DNA from: Paramoeba atlantica
Lineage: Eukaryota; Protista; Discosea
Direction of reading: 5' to 3'
NCBI GenBank assembly: GCA_977017575.1
Contig: CDRNVI010000012.1
Span: 186,001 to 250,000, forward strand
DNA length: 64,000 nt
In this document: positions 30,465-37,600 of the stretch, piece by piece
Layout of the letters: each line of letters opens with the position of its first letter
How positions within the stretch are numbered: position 1 is the first letter of the stretch
The notes under the pieces: model-generated
Seen by the model: the letters and a program-made list of their open reading frames with translations, nothing else
What the model was told of the DNA's origin: nothing
The model's database searches: none
Program-made: the position numbers and the translations under genes

Positions 30465-31868
30465 TCACTGAGGCATACGTCTTACCGGTCGGCCCACGGG
30501 GTGGCTCACATACCCATAACGTGAGTGCGAAGGCAAGGAGGGTTTGGACTCCCGCCGCACTGGCCCTCCGGGAGTCACCCGTGAGACCATTTCAGCAGGT
30601 CGCTTCGGTGCCGAGGCGCTCCCATACGTAGTGGTCTGACTTTGGTTTGCAGTGCGGTAACCCGCCGTTGAGCTGGAGCTCTGCACACTCCCCCGGTGCG
30701 GCCGCTGTACCGCAACCCGTTCCCCCACGGCGGCTTGATAGCCTACTGAATGACGTGAGGCCGCAGCGGTGACTCCGGGTCGACTCAGGAGCTTCGGGAT
30801 GTACCCCAGTTCAGTTTTCGCGACTCTCTCCTTCCTTTTGCGCTGCGCAATGTCCTCATAGAGGTAGTTGCGGTACTCTGCTACCGTGTAACGAGTGTCG
30901 TCACTGAGGGGTATGACAATCGGTGAGGAGCACGTGGGTTCCTCTGACGGGTTGTGAAAAGCCGCGACATAGGGATGTGCAATCGCTTCCTGGGCGTTGA
31001 GTCGCTTCTTTGGATGAAACCGTAGCAGTCGCCGCATGAAATCCACAGCGTCATGTGGGGCCTCCGGGAACACCTCCTCGAAGCTCCGGGGGGTAACCCG
31101 TCCCATATTCTCCAACATTGTGTTAACGTACGGACTGTGTATCCCGGAGCGGTCCCCTGCACTAGGGTATCCAATCAACCCGATAATGCGTTCAAGCTGG
31201 TTCATCGTAGAGGTCCCTGGGAACAATGGTTTTCCTAGAATCATTTCCCCTGCAATGCAGCCCACGCTCCACATGTCCACTCCAAAGGTGTAGGTGGTGG
31301 AGCCCAGCAGTATCTCCGGCGCTCGGTACCACCGCGTCGCTACATAGTCCGTTAACGCTGGACGGGCCACGTGCGGTTCCGAACTCACCACGGACCGGGC
31401 CAAACCAAAATCTGCCACCTTCATAAAGCACTCCGAGTTCAGCAGCAGGTTCGAGGGCTTCAGGTCGCGGTGCAGAAGCTTTCCTGAATGCAGGTAGAGC
31501 AACGTCTTGAGCAGTTGGTACGTCACGAACCGTTTGTGAATATCCTCGAGAATGCTCACCCGGATGACGCTGTGAAGGTCGGTGGCCATGTACTCGAATA
31601 CGAGGTAAAGATCTTTGTCATTTTCTGCGCGATGTACATTTAAAAGCTTTACCACATTGTCGTGCTTCAAACGATGTAGAAACATCACTTCGCGAAACGT
31701 GCGTTGAGCATCGGTAGAGTTTTGAAAAGCGTCGAAGATCTTCTTTACCGCGACCAAACGTCGCGTACGACGATCGACTGCCTTCCAAACCACACCATAC
31801 GCACCCTTGCCGAGTTGCTGCAGCAACTCGTACCTTCGGGAAATGTGGGGTTCTACTTCGGAGGACAT
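30465..31868 (-). CDS. Mitogen-activated protein kinase, ERK7/8 (MAPK15) family
   Basis: GKGAYGVVWKA, VAVKKIFDAFQNSTDAQRTFRE, HRDLKPSN, DFGLAR, and TDY activation loop (LTDYVATRWYRAPE). Confidence 0.95.
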   Translation of the reverse strand: MSSEVEPHISRRYELLQQLGKGAYGVVWKAVDRRTRRLVAVKKIFDAFQNSTDAQRTFREVMFLHRLKHDNVVKLLNVHRAENDKDLYLVFEYMATDLHSVIRVSILEDIHKRFVTYQLLKTLLYLHSGKLLHRDLKPSNLLLNSECFMKVADFGLARSVVSSEPHVARPALTDYVATRWYRAPEILLGSTTYTFGVDMWSVGCIAGEMILGKPLFPGTSTMNQLERIIGLIGYPSAGDRSGIHSPYVNTMLENMGRVTPRSFEEVFPEAPHDAVDFMRRLLRFHPKKRLNAQEAIAHPYVAAFHNPSEEPTCSSPIVIPLSDDTRYTVAEYRNYLYEDIAQRKRKERVAKTELGYIPKLLSRPGVTAAASRHSVGYQAAVGERVAVQRPHRGSVQSSSSTAGYRTANQSQTTTYGSASAPKRPAEMVSRVTPGGPVRRESKPSLPSHSRYGYVSHPVGRPVRRMPQ

Positions 31869-32076
31869 AGCATGCGCGTATACAAATACTAAGCACCAAT
31901 TTTATGTTCCAATTCGGTAAGACAAATAGTATGTATTTCAGGGGAAAAGTGGAAAAATTGAAACCTTTCTAACACATCAAAAACAGGGAAAAGATATTAA
32001 AAAAGCCAATACCTCGGTCAACACAAAATTTTGTCTATAGTACATACCGTCGCACTCGGAGCTCTATGACCGAAAT

Positions 32077-32654
32077 TGAAATTCTACCTTGTTGTTGTTG
32101 TTTTCTGTACCTTGTTGATCTACCCCATGTACCCCTTCACCCCCGTTCGCCGCGCCCTTCGCCGTCTCCCCGCCGTACTCCCCGCCGTGCTTCCCGCCGC
32201 GCTCCCGTCGCTTTCCCGCCGCTGTCCCGCTGCTCTCCCGTCGCTTTCCCGCCGTGTGCCTTCTATGGTTGAGGTACTCTCATGGCGGCACAGATGCGTC
32301 GAGCATCGGCATCCGCACAGCGCACCTAGGCTGAAACTAGGGAGCCATATCTCCTCGGAGACAAACGGCTCTGTGAACCAACCAACCAACCTCCTTCTTT
32401 GAAGGCGCGTGGAGGACTGGTTGCCCCTCTCGTAGGGACCGCTGATCAGTGTGGCCTATCCTCACTGCGTCTCCGACTACCGTCCTCGGTGAAGTGCCAG
32501 CCGTGGCTTGCTACGGCTGGCTCGCCCGCCGGTCCGCAAGGACCGGTCGTACGCATCGGAGTAACATCCGAGCCGTCGGGCCCCTCACGTGGACGGTAGA
32601 GGGCCCATAACCTGTCAAGGCCAAAAGGGTGCAAGAATTATCATCATCATCATC
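32077..32654 (+). mobile_element. Short non-coding retroposon E3 (SL-headed, (CAT)n-tailed)
   Basis: 11-bp direct repeat ATGACCGAAAT at 32066-32076 and 32655-32665. 5' SL fragments, a GC-rich hairpin body, and a (CAT)5-6 tail. Confidence 0.85.
32085..32117 (+). other. Spliced-leader exon relics (3' fragments)
   Basis: TTTCTGTACCTTGTTG at 32102-32117, preceded by TACCTTGTTG (32085-32094) and TTGTTG (32095-32100). Identical to the SL-like segment at 34070-34085. Confidence 0.75.
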
Positions 32655-33539
32655 ATGACCGAAATGTATACGATAAAAAAGATATAACATACGATAGCAT
32701 ACAAGATGTAAGAATACATGTAAGAATGTTTGACATGCTTTCGTTTTTAATTCCTTTAACTTTGCTCTCACACAGTAAATTTTTCCCAGTAACTGACGTC
32801 AAGAGATTCCCACCATCGATCACTCGACACCAATTTATCGGCTTGTTTTATTTTCTTGTTGCTTTCGAAAGGCGGTTGGTCGGAAACGTTTTTACGATAA
32901 GCGTACCACACATTTTTTTCTGTGTCCCACTTTGCAAACCGTGTCGGAAGGCTATCGATTTTTAAGTCTTTTTTCGGAGAATAATAGACGCAAATCTTTT
33001 TAAGGTCGTGCGGGGCCCGTTCTTTGTCAACGTAAAGCGTGACGCGATTATCAAAAATGGATACGAAGTTGGTCGAGTCTGGCAACTGAGAGATGTCAAC
33101 TTCGCCCTCAAATTTATTTCTTGCCAGGGCTAGCTGCTTGATTGATGAGGGAACACGTGATAAATCTAACCGTCCGGTAAAGGAGTTATTATGCAACGAT
33201 AACATGTTCAGTGAATCGGGAAGAACACTTAAATCAAGTTTGCCTTCGAGCATATTATGATCCAGAAACAGGTGTGATAAAGTCGAAGGCAAGGACTCAA
33301 AAAATACGACACCTGAAAATCTATTCCAGTCTAACAAAAGATCTAACATTGTGGGAGGTAAGGCGACCAAGTCGAGTTCCCCGTGACGCTGATTATATCT
33401 TCCCCATAGACTCTGTAAAGTGCGCGGAAGTTCTCTTAGAGCAAGTTCTCCATCTAACCGATTGTCATCTAGGTGTATGGTTTCAAGTTTTCCCGCTTCA
33501 CGCCCCAGCTTTATAGATCCGGTAAGAAGATTGTTATTT

Positions 33540-34097
33540 TGATGTTCATGCGCTCGTTGGCGCAGAGATACAGCCCTTGATGCGACAGCCGATATCATTG
33601 GCACAATCCGTATTGACGGATGTCGCACCAAGGGGGTTTAGCTCGGACTCTGTCGGTAGAGGGGGTCCAGGCAACTCGCCCTCTCTTTACGCAGCCGGAG
33701 GGGCGCACTGCAACCGACTCGGTCCCAGTCGGTAGAGGTGGTCCAGGCAACTCACCACCTCTTTACGCAGCCGGAGGGGCGCACTGCAACCGACCGCTGC
33801 CTCGCGATAATGCGAGGCAGAGCCACGCCCAGTGGTCCTCAAGGGAGGCCACCATGGCGCATGGCTCCCCGGGAAGAAAAGGGCGCGAAGGGAAGAAAGC
33901 CGGGGAGGGAAGAAAACCCACTCAAGGAGTGAGCCGGGGAGGGGTGATGGGGTGGAAGCGCGTCCCCTACTTCGCCGAGAAAGAGGGACAGTTTAGGCCT
34001 TAGTGCCGGCCGGCAACGGGCATATAAAACAGTAAGATTATGCCCGTTGCCGGGGAAAGAAAAGATGAACAACAAGGTACAGAAACTGTATCTTTAA
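33540..34097 (-). mobile_element. Short non-coding retroposon E1 (SL-headed)
   Basis: Begins with 26-28 nt of SL-like exon. Shares 150 bp (33824-33973 vs 49058-49207) and the 3' end (33542-33571 vs 48732-48760) with E2, and contains a 76-bp tandem duplication and several hairpins. Confidence 0.85.
34070..34097 (-). other. Spliced-leader exon relic
   Basis: Minus strand reads (TT)AAAGATACAGTTTCTGTACCTTGTTG. It contains the kinetoplastid SL core CAGTTTCTGTAC followed by 7 nt ending in TTG, as in Trypanosoma (TATATTG) and Leishmania (TTTATTG). No GT donor follows. Confidence 0.85.
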
Positions 34098-34799
34098 CTC
34101 TACCCTTCGTACTGTTTTAGGAAGATGCGCGAAATCCATACTTCCTTGCAGATCGCGGCCGTCCCATTCTATTTCGTCGATTTCCCCGCTTTCGAGTACA
34201 TTAATTCCATCCCACTTACAAGCAGGATTGTCTACTACCCAAGTTACATGAGGATTAGTTAGATTTGCCACGAGACGGGCCAAATGAAATTCCGGAGCAA
34301 GCACAGTCCTATGTATCTTAGAGGGTCGCTTCTGGTGTTCATACCCGTACACATGGACAACGCTCCGCATTAATACCATTCGAATAGTTTCATAAGTGCA
34401 TATTTCATAAGTATGTACATACAGTTGTATTGTAGGTAGCACATGTTACAAATAGTGGGCCCCCATTTATAGCGCCGCGGTGTACGTCCGCACGTATTGG
34501 GGCATTTTAAAAACAAATAGTTTTTTAGGCTCTTCGTTAAACGTGGTGGTTGTTTTCAACTTAGTCAAGTCACTCGTGCTGCGCGCTTCGCGTTGAAAAC
34601 TACCTCCGCATTTAACGAAGAGAGCAAAAAAGGACATTTGATCAGGAAAGCCGAAGAATATTTGAGCGAAAAATAGCCGATTTTTAGGTAAAAATGGGGG
34701 CATTCTTGCGTATTTTTGCCCTCAGAACACTAAATCTTAAAGTACATGTAGTAGCAGTAATATACACGCTGTTGAATCCTGTTTTACTTCCTACCGCTA

Positions 34800-37600
34800 C
34801 TCTTTCTCTCCCCTGGCGCAAGCCCATGACCCGACGTCGGCGTGACCATCGGGGATCCAAGGATTCCATTACTGGGCTTAACGCCCCACTATCCTCGACC
34901 TCAGGGGGACCTGCTACCACCCCTCTCAGGCGAGGCTCCAGCCCCCATCCCTCCCTAGGGGTCGAGGGGCTGCGCCAGCTCTCCATCGAGGAGCTGAAGA
35001 AGGCGAGGTCGGACTTGGTCGTCCGAGTCAAGGAGCAGCACAAGACATGTGCACGTGACTTCTGTGGCCTCCCTTTCGTGCCAATCAGGCGGTACAACCG
35101 CCTGTGTGATGAGTGCGTCTCTCTGCGCTCTCGGCACAGGAACGACATACGAGCGCGTGCTTTGACGCAAGCCTCTGGGACCCCTCCATCCCGTTCCACG
35201 TCTTCCTCCCGATCCTCCCGCGCCAAGTCCCCGGCCTGCAGGATCACACGCTCTTCTTCCTCTAGGGGCCGATCCCGGAGCGTAAACCGTACAGGTAGTA
35301 CGGTTGCCCCACCCCTATCCTCAGGAAATCGGCTAACGTCTCCTTTGCTCATCTCCCCACCTCCGACAGCCACCGCGCGTCCTACGCCCGCGTCTCGATG
35401 CCAGGCACGGAGACCGCCCCTCAGTCCGCGTCGGACATTATGGATAGTGACGCCCCCACCCAGGTGGAGCACCCGCTTAACCTGCCTACTCTAGGACAAC
35501 AGTTTAAGGCTATGGACGCCGTGCGTCTCAATCTCCTCCCCGCCCCCCTCTGTTCGGGGCGCCCTCTTGCGGAATCCGGCAGATGCTCCGCCTCTTTACG
35601 TCTTTACTCTGCCCTTCACTCGGAACAAGAGAGGGTTTCCCTAGAGGAAATGGAGGTCAGGGCCCGTCGCGAGCTCCTCCTAGAGGCCATCAGTGGCTTA
35701 CACGCCGCTCAGAAGGCCATCGAAGACCGCCTTTTCCTTATTAATCCGGGTCACCTAGTCTGCATCGAATGTCGACTACCCCAACCCCACCATGTTGCCC
35801 TACAAGCCCACCTCATCAAGGTGCACGGGACCAAGCGCCTTAGGAAAGCGTTTTTGGTCCTGCTTAAGGAACATGCCCCGGAAGCTCTACGGATCAAAAC
35901 CGAACGATACGCCACCCTGATGGCTTCGTACGCGGAGTTTTGCGCGGAGGAAGCCCGCTTGCGCTTGGCCCAGGTCTCCACCGAGCCCCACGGGCCCCCA
36001 TGGCCCCTGCCCCCCCAACACTCCCCCCCTTCCTCCTTCCGTACCTCCCCCCTCACCTTTCCCCCCATTTCTCCTGGCGGACGGGCCGGGCGTACAAAGG
36101 GCACCGGCGAGAGCATCTACAGGGGAGGCACCGAATAAACCATTCGAACCGGAAGGAAAGGATGTTTTTAAAATACTCCTAGACTTTGGCCCCGAGCGCT
36201 CGAGCTATATCATCATCCCTTGCCCGCCCGAACGCTCGTTCCAAGCGATCATAGGCATAGTGGGCAACACCCTAGGGGTCCCGGGAGAGAGCCTACTCTT
36301 GAAAGACATTTCAGGAGAAGTCACCTCCATCACCGACTGGAACGGGCTGGACCGTGCGCAACGAGTCGCGGTCAGTTTGTCCCTTCCCCTCCTTTCCCCA
36401 GGGCCTGGCGACAGGCCCACACTCAGGGTGTATGATGGGACCCGTCACGGCTTGGTTTCGACCCCAGGTCTGAACGCGGCTCATGACATCCCCGCGGGGC
36501 TCAATGAGAGCCTAGGAATACCTCGGATCATGACCGGGGCTTGGGAGCCCCGCCAATACGAGGAAGGGCTCCTGTGGTGTTTCCTCCCCACGGAGACCCT
36601 TGTGAGTGAAACGGGTTGGACTACCCGAGTACTCCAATGTAACCTCCGCAGAGGCTGCATTGAGGCGAATCCAGGCCCTCGATCTAAGTCGAGGCGAGCC
36701 TTAGGGGATACCCATAGTGCCCAAACCGCCGGGGCGGTAACCCCTGCCCCGGTTAGGGAAGGCACCATATTGGAAGGGATTGCGGCAGCGACCTCTCCCC
36801 ATAGCCCCTCCCGCCAGGATGGCAAACCCCCCACCCCTCCCCCGCCTCCATACCCCCATCTCATAGGGGCGGACCCTCCCGACAAGGCCCCCCACTTCAC
36901 GCCCCCTAATACCCAAGGCGCGGTAACCGAGTAGGGTGACATCACGCCCTCCCCGGACAGCCTGGCACAGCTCCTTGAAAGGGGCTCGCTGCGTACTCTT
37001 TACGCAGTCCAATGCCCCCCTTGGAAGGACTACGTCACGTCGGTGTGCAGCAACTTCTTGGGGAAGTCCATACGACGGAAAGCTCAAGATCGCCTGGGAT
37101 CTCCTTCTCGGGGTCAAACGGTTCTTGTTTTTCCCCGAAGACAAGCTATCCCAAAGGCAGCTCGCCCAGGGAGCTTCGCAAAAGGGCTCACCTAGAGGGG
37201 TCGGAAACCTTAGCCCCGACCCCTCCCCTCACCAACAGCTTCCCCCGCTCCGTTATCAAGCGGGGGGTAGAGCTGATTCGGGCAGGGGCCTTCTCCAGGG
37301 CGGCCAAGATCTTGGAAGCCCCCCTCGACCCGCCGGCAAACCCTGTTACGGCGGGGGAACAGGCGAAACGCCTCCGCCCAGCGGGGGGTCCCTATAACAC
37401 CCCTTTGTCTATGACAAAGACAGTCATGGACCCCTCCCGTCGGAGGCGGATGTTGCCCGGAAGGCAAGCCTGGCGCCGCTTAGAGCGCCAGGCCCGTCCA
37501 AGGAACTCCTGGTCCCCATCCTGCAGGAGGGTGAACCGAGGGACGTCGTCACTTGGATCATTCAAGGGATCCTCACCAACTCCCTGCCTCCCACGATGAG
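34800..37600 (+). mobile_element. Degenerate CRE/SLACS-like non-LTR retrotransposon, 5' portion (RT not present)
   Basis: GC-rich, antisense to the cluster, frameshifted ORF pieces. C-x2-C-x12-H-x4-H finger (35761-35826), 2A-like GCIEANPGP (36653-36679), AWDLLLGVKRFL, and RGVELIRAGAFSRAAKIL pre-RT-like motif (37261-37314). Confidence 0.65.

What the first reader, a model, noticed from the sequence alone, without database searches (positions are those of the whole stretch)
32066..32665. Spliced-leader-headed short retroposon with target-site duplication and (CAT)n tail
This is the strongest signal in the window. A 578-bp non-coding insert is flanked by a perfect 11-bp direct repeat (ATGACCGAAAT), ends in (CAT)n and starts with TTTCTGTACCTTGTTG. 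The same 16-mer heads E1 at 34070-34085, and the two diverge immediately after TTG, where the 39-nt SL exon ends; neither is followed by GT. These are hallmarks of target-primed reverse transcription of a trans-spliced RNA. The inference is a SINE-like family that gains its cap and 5' end by SL trans-splicing rather than using an internal promoter, and is primed without poly(A). The SIDER/RIME/NARTc elements I know carry the ingi 77-79-nt signature instead, which is not seen here.
Basis: partly seen in the sequence, partly recalled or inferred. Interest (0 to 1): 0.9.

Follow-up and report, generated by a model that had tools for sequence, protein, structure and literature searches.

The report
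Chimeric retrocopy carrying relict spliced leaders
The 578-base insert is a real but dead, one-off retrocopy stitched from a small spliced-leader-headed retroposon and the tail of a LINE jumping gene, and its leader fragment belongs to a genome-wide pattern in this kinetoplastid of trans-spliced RNAs being copied back into DNA.

Summary
Observation largely confirmed. The 11-bp direct repeat (32066-76, 32655-65), the (ATC)n tail and both copies of the 16-mer are exact and non-random. One correction: the 16-mer lies 25 nt inside the insert, behind an older, degenerate leader relic.

Interpretation partly supported. The species spliced leader (SL) does end in CCTTGTTG, followed by GT in tandem SL RNA gene arrays. 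About 850 SL cores are scattered through the genome.

The insert is not a SINE family. It is a single integration event, later copied with its flanks to contig C2. It has three modules:
- A: stacked SL relics plus CCG-rich repeats.
- B: a LINE-type tail module ending in (AACC)4.
- C: the terminal ~250-nt 3'UTR cassette of endonuclease-plus-RT (APE-type) LINEs, ending in (ATC)5.

A+B occurs without C at other loci. The best reading is that a LINE enzyme switched templates from the cassette RNA to an A+B RNA and integrated the product with one 11-bp target duplication.

The 16-mer is the part of the SL downstream of its internal AG. The zero-gap junction SL-end|16-mer occurs 14 times in the genome, against 0 in the control, the same recycling signature known from dinoflagellates.

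E1 belongs to a different system: more than 460 candidate copies, no target duplication, a fixed site in LRR genes, and GT after the SL in the family consensus.

This scan had already noted SL-headed retroposons on other pieces of this genome.

The parts
32066..32076 (+). 5' copy of the 11-bp target-site duplication ATGACCGAAAT
   Evidence: Exact and present only twice in the window. The C2 paralog has one mismatch here.
32077..32094 (+). Older, degenerate relic of the SL 3' part (about nt 20-39, with a GT deletion and 2-3 substitutions)
   Evidence: Read against the SL deduced. The same relic is shared from insert position 5 onward by the C25/C69 copies.
32095..32101 (+). TTGTTGT spacer between the two relics, an unstable T/TTG run
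   Evidence: The C2 paralog has TTTT here instead. Contigs of public runs show a 3-nt length difference at 32089.
32102..32117 (+). Exact 16-mer, SL nt 24-39: the part of the leader downstream of its internal AG
   Evidence: The genome holds 14 zero-gap junctions ACCTTGTTG|TTTCTGTACCTTGTTG against 0 in the control.
32118..32253 (+). Body of module A: unique start, then CCG-rich 11/12/33-nt tandem repeats (32160-32254)
   Evidence: Tandem Repeats Finder. Homologous stretches lie at C25/C69, C5, C18, C38, C19 and C27 at 70-88% identity.
32254..32375 (+). Module B (M2): 3'-terminal module of another LINE/SINE-like group, ending in a small hairpin
   Evidence: At least 25 separate hits at 81-98% identity. 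It lies 67 nt downstream of RT-like ORF ends at C21 and C166. The same module follows other heads in L001 and L060. A similar terminal hairpin closes a LINE in L092.
32376..32391 (+). (AACC)4 microsatellite tail of module B. It overlaps the ACC-rich first bases of module C
   Evidence: Other M2 copies end in (AAAC)n or (TACC)n at the same point.
32389..32639 (+). Module C (M3): the terminal ~250-nt 3'UTR cassette of APE-type LINEs, starting at its canonical 5' boundary
   Evidence: 79 candidates, and the scored copies are 88-94% identical. All copies share the same 5' boundary. It lies directly downstream of RT ORFs (RVT_1, 6e-23). The 1178-aa ORF on C66 carries both the endonuclease and the RT. 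The predicted fold is strong but shows no covariation.
32640..32654 (+). (ATC)5 tail, the priming end
   Evidence: Other M3 copies end in (CAT)n, (CAA)n or (AATAG)n.
32655..32665 (+). 3' copy of the 11-bp target-site duplication
33540..34098 (-). E1: a copy of a separate, abundant, non-coding retroposon. It starts at about SL nt 12 and splits an LRR gene. It is not part of the insert but the finding cites it
   Evidence: 460 candidates, and the scored copies are 92-99% identical. Contigs of three DNA runs carry ACA in place of 33540-34098.

Best explanation
The insert is one dead, LINE-mediated retrocopy of chimeric make-up.

Proposed sequence of events:
1. An APE-type LINE enzyme nicked the intergenic target and primed on the (AUC)n end of an RNA carrying the M3 3'UTR cassette. 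It copied that cassette to its 5' boundary.
2. It then switched template onto the (AACC)n tail of a second RNA. That RNA was a low-copy non-autonomous retroposon, 'A+B', whose tail is the 3' module of another LINE group and whose head is made of stacked spliced-leader relics.
3. It copied A+B to, or near, its 5' end and completed integration, leaving one 11-bp target duplication.
4. Later the whole locus was duplicated to contig C2.

The 16-mer is a relict SL. An ancestor RNA of A+B was trans-spliced and retroposed with its SL. The DNA-encoded SL was then re-spliced at its own internal AG (ACAG|TTTCTG...), and that product was retroposed again. The result is an older SL relic followed by SL nt 24-39.

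Shown: the module structure, the LINE origin of module C, the single target duplication, the single-event status, the SL sequence, and the genome-wide recycling junctions.
Inferred: the template switch itself, the order of events, and the splicing history of this particular head.
For: - Target duplication and tail.
- Single event: the only other full copy has 99.3% identical flanks over 2.6 kb, and the junction SL-end+ATCTACCCCATG occurs only 4 times, as two duplicated pairs.
- Modules: M3 is present alone at 25 or more loci with different upstream bodies and always the same 5' boundary.
- M3 sits after RT ORFs of ORFs that also carry an Exo_endo_phos endonuclease (C66, 1178 aa). Among solved structures the RT is nearest to L1 ORF2p.
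- M2 occurs alone with its own microsatellite tails and just downstream of RT-like ORF ends.
- A+B without C lies at C25/C69 and in part at C5.
- Modules B and C have no flanking repeats of their own.
- ACC microhomology at the B|C joint.
- SL: arrays with the full SL followed by GT; 846 against 9 core hits; SL fused to many different 5'UTR+ATG sequences; 14 zero-gap SL|post-AG junctions and 2 using the other internal AG, with 0 in the control; one more example in an independent ENA assembly.
- Precedent: a tripartite LINE chimera flanked by a 14-bp repeat in Magnaporthe (PMC2104539).
Against: - No empty-site allele of the insert was seen in three DNA runs, so the one-step origin is not shown directly.
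- The two SL relics are separated by 7 nt (4 nt in C2) instead of joined directly. The recycling reading of this particular head therefore needs later slippage.
Their independence and their 5' ends are inferred from coordinates alone.
- M3 starts at its canonical boundary, which also fits a pre-existing A+B-M3 source transcript retroposed as one unit.
Confidence: 0.68

Rival explanations
1. The 578 bp is a member of an active SINE-like family whose RNA gains its cap and 5' end by SL trans-splicing in every generation and is primed on a (CAT)n tail.
For: The target duplication, microsatellite tail and SL-derived head are real. Genome-wide, SL-headed retrocopies and re-spliced relics exist. A+B is a small family with an SL-relic head.
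Against: There are only two full copies, and they are one event. The head is not a fresh SL: the copy starts in an old, degenerate relic, and the 16-mer is internal and also fixed, in degenerate form, in the C25/C69 relatives. The (CAT)n-tailed part is a LINE 3' cassette that the other A+B copies lack. This copy lies antisense to its polycistronic transcription unit.
Confidence: 0.1
2. Two successive insertions at one spot. A+B inserted first and made the 11-bp duplication. A 5'-truncated M3-tailed LINE fragment later landed exactly between the (AACC)n tail and the 3' duplication, without making a duplication of its own.
For: Microsatellite tails can attract LINE insertions. A+B exists without C elsewhere. 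M3 copies are numerous.
Against: It requires an insertion exactly at the tail/duplication border with no target duplication or deletion. It also requires an M3 fragment that happens to begin at the cassette's canonical 5' boundary. No intermediate allele was seen.
Confidence: 0.15
3. The segment is a remnant of an SL RNA gene or array, or the flank of a CRE/SLACS-type element inserted in an SL gene.
For: It contains SL sequence. CRE-clade elements are reported from the bodonid Bodo saltans (PMC4728078).
Against: The SL pieces are not followed by GT or by intron sequence. The real arrays lie elsewhere, with a 2.56-kb period. The flanks are unique intergenic DNA between a kinase gene and an LRR gene. 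The insert is bounded by an 11-bp duplication and a LINE tail.
Confidence: 0.02

Closest known systems
LINE template-switch chimeras (U6/L1 chimeras in mammals; the WEIRD-Mg-SINE-MGL tripartite element of Magnaporthe, PMC2104539)
   Same: Pieces of different RNAs are joined head to tail in one orientation. The 3'-most piece is a LINE 3' end. One short direct repeat flanks the whole (14 bp there, 11 bp here). The switch happens at a defined place in the first template.
   Different: Here the tails are microsatellites, not poly(A), and the upstream partner carries relict spliced leaders. The host is a kinetoplastid, where I found no such chimeras described in the searches I ran.
Relict spliced leaders of dinoflagellate retrogenes (PMC5585692, PMC6050394, PMC12014239)
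   Same: The SL is DNA-encoded at the 5' end of retroposed sequences. Truncated SLs are stacked because a new SL is spliced onto the AG inside the old one. Here there are 14 zero-gap junctions after ACAG and 2 after AAAG.
   Different: The SL here is the kinetoplastid ~39-nt leader. Many carriers are retroelements or non-coding passengers rather than host retrogenes. In this insert the two relics are separated by a short unstable spacer.
RIME/ingi and NARTc/L1Tc of trypanosomatids
   Same: A short non-autonomous partner shares the ends of an APE-type LINE and makes ~11-12-bp target duplications in a polycistronic genome.
   Different: Those elements carry the Pr77 promoter at the 5' end, give unspliced transcripts (PMC1874656, PMC8190864) and end in poly(A). 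Here the head is SL-derived and the tails are microsatellites. I did not test for Pr77 because I had no reference sequence.
CRE/SLACS/CZAR site-specific retrotransposons
   Same: They are associated with SL sequence in kinetoplastids. The neighbouring E1 family starts near SL nt 12, close to their insertion point, and integrates R2-style without a target duplication.
   Different: The 578-bp insert is not in an SL RNA gene, has an 11-bp duplication, and has an APE-LINE tail. It is not of this kind.

Membership tests
LINE-mediated chimeric retrocopy (template switch) | The 3'-most part is the 3' end of a LINE, with that LINE's own tail | tested here: met
   M3 lies directly after RVT_1 ORFs. 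The same ORF on C66 carries an Exo_endo_phos endonuclease. Tails are (CAT)n or (CAA)n.
LINE-mediated chimeric retrocopy (template switch) | Parts come from different RNAs, are joined directly in the same orientation, and each occurs on its own elsewhere | tested here: met
   M3 occurs alone, M2 alone, and A+B without M3 at C25/C69.
LINE-mediated chimeric retrocopy (template switch) | One target-site duplication around the whole, and none around the parts | tested here: met
   The 11-bp repeat is at the outer borders only.
LINE-mediated chimeric retrocopy (template switch) | An empty pre-integration site showing a one-step gain | tested here: inconclusive
   No joint skipping 32077-32654 appeared in contigs of three DNA runs. 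Both paralogs are filled.
SINE family | Many dispersed copies of the whole unit, each with its own target duplication | tested here: not met
   There are two full copies with 99.3% identical flanks, which is one event.
SINE family | A head derived from a small RNA gene with an internal promoter (tRNA, 7SL, 5S, snRNA) | tested here: not met
   No Rfam family matched. The head is only SL exon fragments, with no SL intron and no GT.
SINE family | A 3' tail shared with a partner LINE | tested here: met
   The M3 and M2 modules are shared with RT-encoding elements.
Relict-SL retrocopies (dinoflagellate type) | A DNA-encoded SL exon, without its intron, at the head of a retroposed sequence | tested here: met
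   The SL exon end is followed by ATCTACC rather than GT, whereas the SL in the arrays is followed by GT.
Relict-SL retrocopies (dinoflagellate type) | Stacked truncated SLs that begin right after an AG inside the SL | tested here: inconclusive
   Met genome-wide: 14 zero-gap and 2 alternative-AG junctions, with 0 in the control. In this insert the second relic starts exactly after the AG position but is separated from the first by 7 nt (4 nt in C2).
ingi/RIME/SIDER | The 77-79-nt Pr77 signature at the 5' end | not tested
   I had no reference sequence to hand. The first 41 nt are SL-derived, which leaves no room for it at the 5' end.
CRE/SLACS/CZAR | Insertion inside an SL RNA gene at a fixed position of the exon | tested here: not met
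   The flanks are unique intergenic DNA between a kinase gene and an LRR gene. The arrays lie on other contigs.

The most novel reading that the evidence does not exclude
In this free-living kinetoplastid a whole community of retroelements (APE-type and R2-like LINEs and their non-coding passengers) uses SL trans-splicing of polycistronic read-through RNA, rather than an internal promoter such as Pr77, to make capped 5' ends. The leader is copied back into DNA and then re-spliced at its own internal AGs in later rounds. The insert would be a fossil of that cycle, and also a case of a passenger acquiring a new LINE tail by template switching, which is one way new SINE/LINE partnerships could be born.
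Probability: 0.4. Interest if true: 0.75.

Novelty: new variant of a known kind. Interest (0 to 1): 0.55.

Why it matters
Trypanosomatid retroposons are thought to rely on the Pr77 internal promoter and to give unspliced transcripts. Relict spliced leaders in DNA are so far a hallmark of dinoflagellates.

This genome shows the dinoflagellate-type signature in a kinetoplastid. There are hundreds of DNA-encoded leaders, including leaders stacked at the internal AG. In this insert the leader relics are tied to LINE machinery by a clean target duplication.

That gives a built-in tag for dating and counting RNA-mediated duplication in a lineage with polycistronic transcription. It also makes testable how retroelement RNAs get their 5' ends where promoters are scarce. 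The insert itself is an inert fossil.

Tried and rejected
- Rfam over the whole window at gathering thresholds, and over 31900-34300 at E up to 10: nothing meaningful, no ribozyme and no SL RNA family.
- tRNA search on the M2-bearing loci L001 and L060: none.
- Pfam on the four long overlapping ORFs at 34684-36934, noted by the scan as a CRE/SLACS-like remnant: no hit. tblastn with the APE-LINE RTs and with long ORFs from the E1-flank loci L061-L090 and the ENA loci L091-L093 (these include the R2-like RT ORF of L075) found nothing there beyond the LRR gene. I could not confirm that note.
I did not work around this with N-padded patterns.
- Looking for a full-length M3 LINE with its 5' end in public assemblies, through RT representatives and three ENA contigs (L091-L093): these are related APE LINEs and SL-headed units of the same or a close organism, but none carries M3. 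Cluster look-up gave no names, so the LINE clade is unassigned.
- RNA evidence: the only possible RNA run holds almost none of the stretch, so expression and real 5' ends are untested.
- Covariation in M3: none, because the copies are too similar.
- The idea that E1 is an SL RNA gene copy: rejected. The arrays do not share E1's 20 nt after the exon within 3 mismatches.
- The idea that the E1 form lacking 17 nt carries a full, freshly spliced SL: rejected. All 4 copies start at about nt 12.

Full report
**Setting.** The window is G000:C12:186001-250000 of a 45.7-Mb genome in 248 contigs. Nearly all long ORFs lie on the minus strand, as in a kinetoplastid polycistronic unit. The conserved kinetoplastid SL core CAGTTTCTGTAC is present. 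The insert lies on the plus strand, antisense to the unit. It sits in the spacer between a protein kinase gene (30465-31868, Pkinase 1e-64) and an LRR-type gene (32768-33631).

**Check of the observation.**
- ATGACCGAAAT occurs exactly twice in 64 kb, at 32066-76 and 32655-65 (expected 0.04).
- The 578 bp between the repeats end in (ATC)5.7.
- The 16-mer occurs twice, at 32102-17 (+) and 34070-85 (-).
- The insert has only short, low-complexity ORFs.
- Correction: the 16-mer is not the first base of the insert. It is preceded by 32077-94, a degenerate copy of the same SL 3' part, and by a TTGTTGT spacer.

**The species' spliced leader.**
- The core has 846 genomic matches against 9 for the reversed control.
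- In 30 sampled loci the shared sequence reads (A/T)CTTTAACGATAAAGATACAGTTTCTGTACCTTGTTG and diverges right after TTG. What follows is many different short 5'UTRs and ATG-initiated ORFs.
- The full leader followed by GT occurs 56 times exactly. These include regular arrays with a period of about 2.56 kb on C97 and C107, and clusters on C11 and C74. These are the bona fide SL RNA genes.
- A further 155 matches differ only by one base, mostly in the two bases after the exon (AT, TT, CT). These are exon-only copies.

**The insert is one event, not a family.** Only one other full-length match exists (C2:37100-37674, 98%). Its flanks are 99.3% identical over 2.6 kb, so it is a segmental duplicate. 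The joint between the SL end and the body (SL-end+ATCTACCCCATG) occurs at 4 places only. These are the window and C2, plus a degenerate pair at C25/C69 with identical internal spacing.

**Anatomy.** Homology searches split the insert into three modules.

*Module C (M3; 32389-32639, plus the (ATC)5 tail).*
- It matches 25 or more loci at 88-94% identity, always from the same 5' boundary (CCACCTTCTTTGAAGG...). Upstream sequences and tails differ between loci: (CAT)n, (CAA)n, (AATAG)n.
- In L034 and L035 it follows ORFs with RVT_1 (6e-23; RVT_1 plus DUF6451).
- On C66 the same 1178-aa open frame carries an Exo_endo_phos endonuclease at 332028-332687 and the RT at 329646-330875, with M3 at 328815-329077.
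- Among solved structures the RT is closest to human L1 ORF2p, ahead of R2.
- The ORFs that carry M3 are only 41-55% identical in protein, while M3 is about 90% identical in DNA. M3 therefore behaves as a shared terminal cassette.
- Its predicted fold is strong (-103 kcal/mol) but has no compensatory changes.

*Module B (M2; 32254-32375, plus (AACC)4).*
- It has 25 or more separate matches.
- In L001 and L060 it ends other short elements, with (AAAC)n and (TACC)n tails at the same point.
- At C21 and C166 it lies 67 nt after RT-like ORF ends.
- A LINE in an independent ENA assembly ends in a similar hairpin plus (CAAT)n.

*Module A (32077-32253).*
- It holds the SL relics and CCG-rich tandem repeats.
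- It recurs together with B, but without C, at C25/C69 and in part at C5. More distant heads (70-76%) lie at C18, C38, C27 and C5.
- At C27 and C5 an A-like head and an M2 tail lie 3-4 kb apart on the same strand. This hints that A+B is an internally deleted LINE, as RIME is to ingi. It is inferred from coordinates only.

**How it formed.**
- One 11-bp duplication bounds the whole insert. Neither B nor C has a repeat of its own.
- C begins exactly at the cassette boundary, and that boundary (ACCACC) overlaps the (AACC)n tail of B.
- The simplest account is target-primed reverse transcription by an M3-recognising APE LINE enzyme, a switch from the 5' end of the cassette to the tail of an A+B RNA, and completion at the 5' end of that RNA.
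- This is the architecture described for LINE chimeras, including a tripartite one flanked by a 14-bp repeat in Magnaporthe (PMC2104539).
- Two alternatives are not excluded: two successive insertions, or a pre-formed A+B-M3 transcript. No empty or intermediate allele was seen.

**What the 16-mer is.**
- The leader contains two internal AGs (...ATAAAG|ATACAG|TTTCTG...), and the 16-mer is exactly what follows the second.
- A search for the SL end followed within 0-9 nt by the 16-mer gave 23 hits and 0 in the control.
- Fourteen hits are the zero-gap junction ACCTTGTTG|TTTCTGTACCTTGTTG. Two restart after the other AG (|ATACAG...). The window and C2 copies have 7- and 4-nt T/TTG spacers.
- A further zero-gap example, with a complete SL in front, lies in the ENA contig L092.
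- This product is expected if a DNA-encoded leader is transcribed, a new leader is spliced to its internal AG, and the RNA is retroposed again. The same logic explains relict leaders in dinoflagellates (PMC5585692, PMC6050394).
- The head of this insert fits that class, with later slippage in the spacer. The relics are old and fixed: the C25/C69 relatives carry them in degenerate form, and this copy has no fresh leader.

**E1 is a different system.**
- E1 spans 33540-34098 (-). It belongs to a family with 460 candidates, and the scored copies are 92-99% identical.
- Copies start at (A/C)TAAAGATACAG, about SL nt 12, and end in ...GCATGAACATCA.
- The family consensus has GTACATTTTCCCTTTAG after the SL part. 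The window copy and at least three others lack exactly these 17 nt, which are bounded by GT and AG, yet still start at nt 12.
- The SL gene arrays do not share the 20 nt after the exon, so E1 is not a copy of the SL RNA gene.
- The SL part pairs with an internal complement in the predicted fold (z = -3.5).
- In the sampled copies with LRR-gene flanks, E1 sits in the sense orientation at what appears to be the same position of the LRR coding repeat.
- Contigs of three DNA runs carry ACA in place of E1.
- The C2 paralog has a related element at window position about 33197, where the window is empty. That insertion made no duplication and lost 2 bp.
- An R2-like RT ORF exists in the genome (L075; best solved-structure match is Bombyx R2, 1e-25).
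- So the two 16-mers share the SL source but not the machinery.

**Literature.** In the searches I ran I found:
- relict leaders only in dinoflagellates and perkinsids;
- for trypanosomatids and Bodo saltans, only the INGI, CRE, VIPER and TATE clades (PMC12278014, PMC4728078);
- for L1Tc, Pr77-driven unspliced transcripts (PMC1874656);
- no paper containing this leader sequence.

Earlier notes of this scan on other pieces of the genome already describe the SL-headed E1-type retroposons and R2-like LINEs. The (CAT)n-tailed APE-LINE cassette and the chimeric structure of this insert were not among the notes I retrieved.

**Verdict.** The feature is real and the observation mostly right. The mechanism is partly right. 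The insert is an inert, one-off chimeric retrocopy rather than a new SINE class. Its value is as a clean specimen, with a target duplication and a LINE tail, of a genome-wide and apparently undescribed kinetoplastid version of spliced-leader recycling.

Noticed in passing
window 33540-34098 (-): This E1 copy is missing from contigs of three DNA runs of the same organism, which carry ACA in its place. The insertion therefore made no target duplication and replaced 3 bp. It is either polymorphic or absent from a near-identical paralog.
   Followed up: partly
window ~33197-33198 vs L032:2618-3231 (C2): The C2 paralog carries a ~610-bp E1-like element (about 80% identical to E1) where the window has the empty site. 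Comparing filled and empty sites shows no target duplication and loss of 2 bp (CG).
   Followed up: yes
window 34070 region; also C53:219032, C54:575692, C82:11796: A sub-group of E1 lacks exactly 17 nt (GTACATTTTCCCTTTAG), bounded by the SL exon end with GT on one side and a pyrimidine tract with AG on the other. This is as if the segment had been removed by splicing. All four copies still begin at about SL nt 12.
   Followed up: partly
L005, L007, L008, L015, L017, L010/12/14 (contig C1): Many complete leaders are directly preceded by a poly(A) run, and the sequences upstream of those runs are homologous to each other. This suggests head-to-tail units (3' end-poly(A)-SL-5' end), formed either by tandem insertion or by end-to-end template jumping.
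   Followed up: partly
G000:C97:349-28634 and C107:1831-22429: Tandem arrays with a period of about 2.56 kb carry the full leader followed by GT. These are the likely functional SL RNA genes. Their sequence could not be fetched.
   Followed up: no
L034, L035, L038, L040-L046: The M3 3'UTR cassette is about 90% identical between LINEs whose ORFs are only 41-55% identical in protein. This suggests cassette exchange between LINE lineages, or very strong constraint.
   Followed up: partly
L075:1-1491 (+): An R2-like reverse transcriptase ORF (best solved-structure match is Bombyx R2, 1e-25) ends 8 nt before an E1 copy.
   Followed up: partly
L049:401-1264 (+); L093:7928-9907: Tc1/mariner-type transposase ORFs (DDE_3, HTH_Tnp_Tc3_2) and a DDE_Tnp_4 gene lie next to retroposon copies. 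DNA transposons are also present in this genome.
   Followed up: no
window 34684-37600: A GC-rich stretch (54-59% GC) has long overlapping ORFs on both strands and no Pfam hit. The scan's note of a CRE/SLACS-like remnant here could not be confirmed with the tests I ran.
   Followed up: partly
L001-L004 (C1:8259-26548): A 5,093-bp tandem repeat. Each unit holds an SL-headed sequence on one strand and, 270 nt away on the other strand, an M2-tailed short element with an (AAAC)n tail.
   Followed up: no
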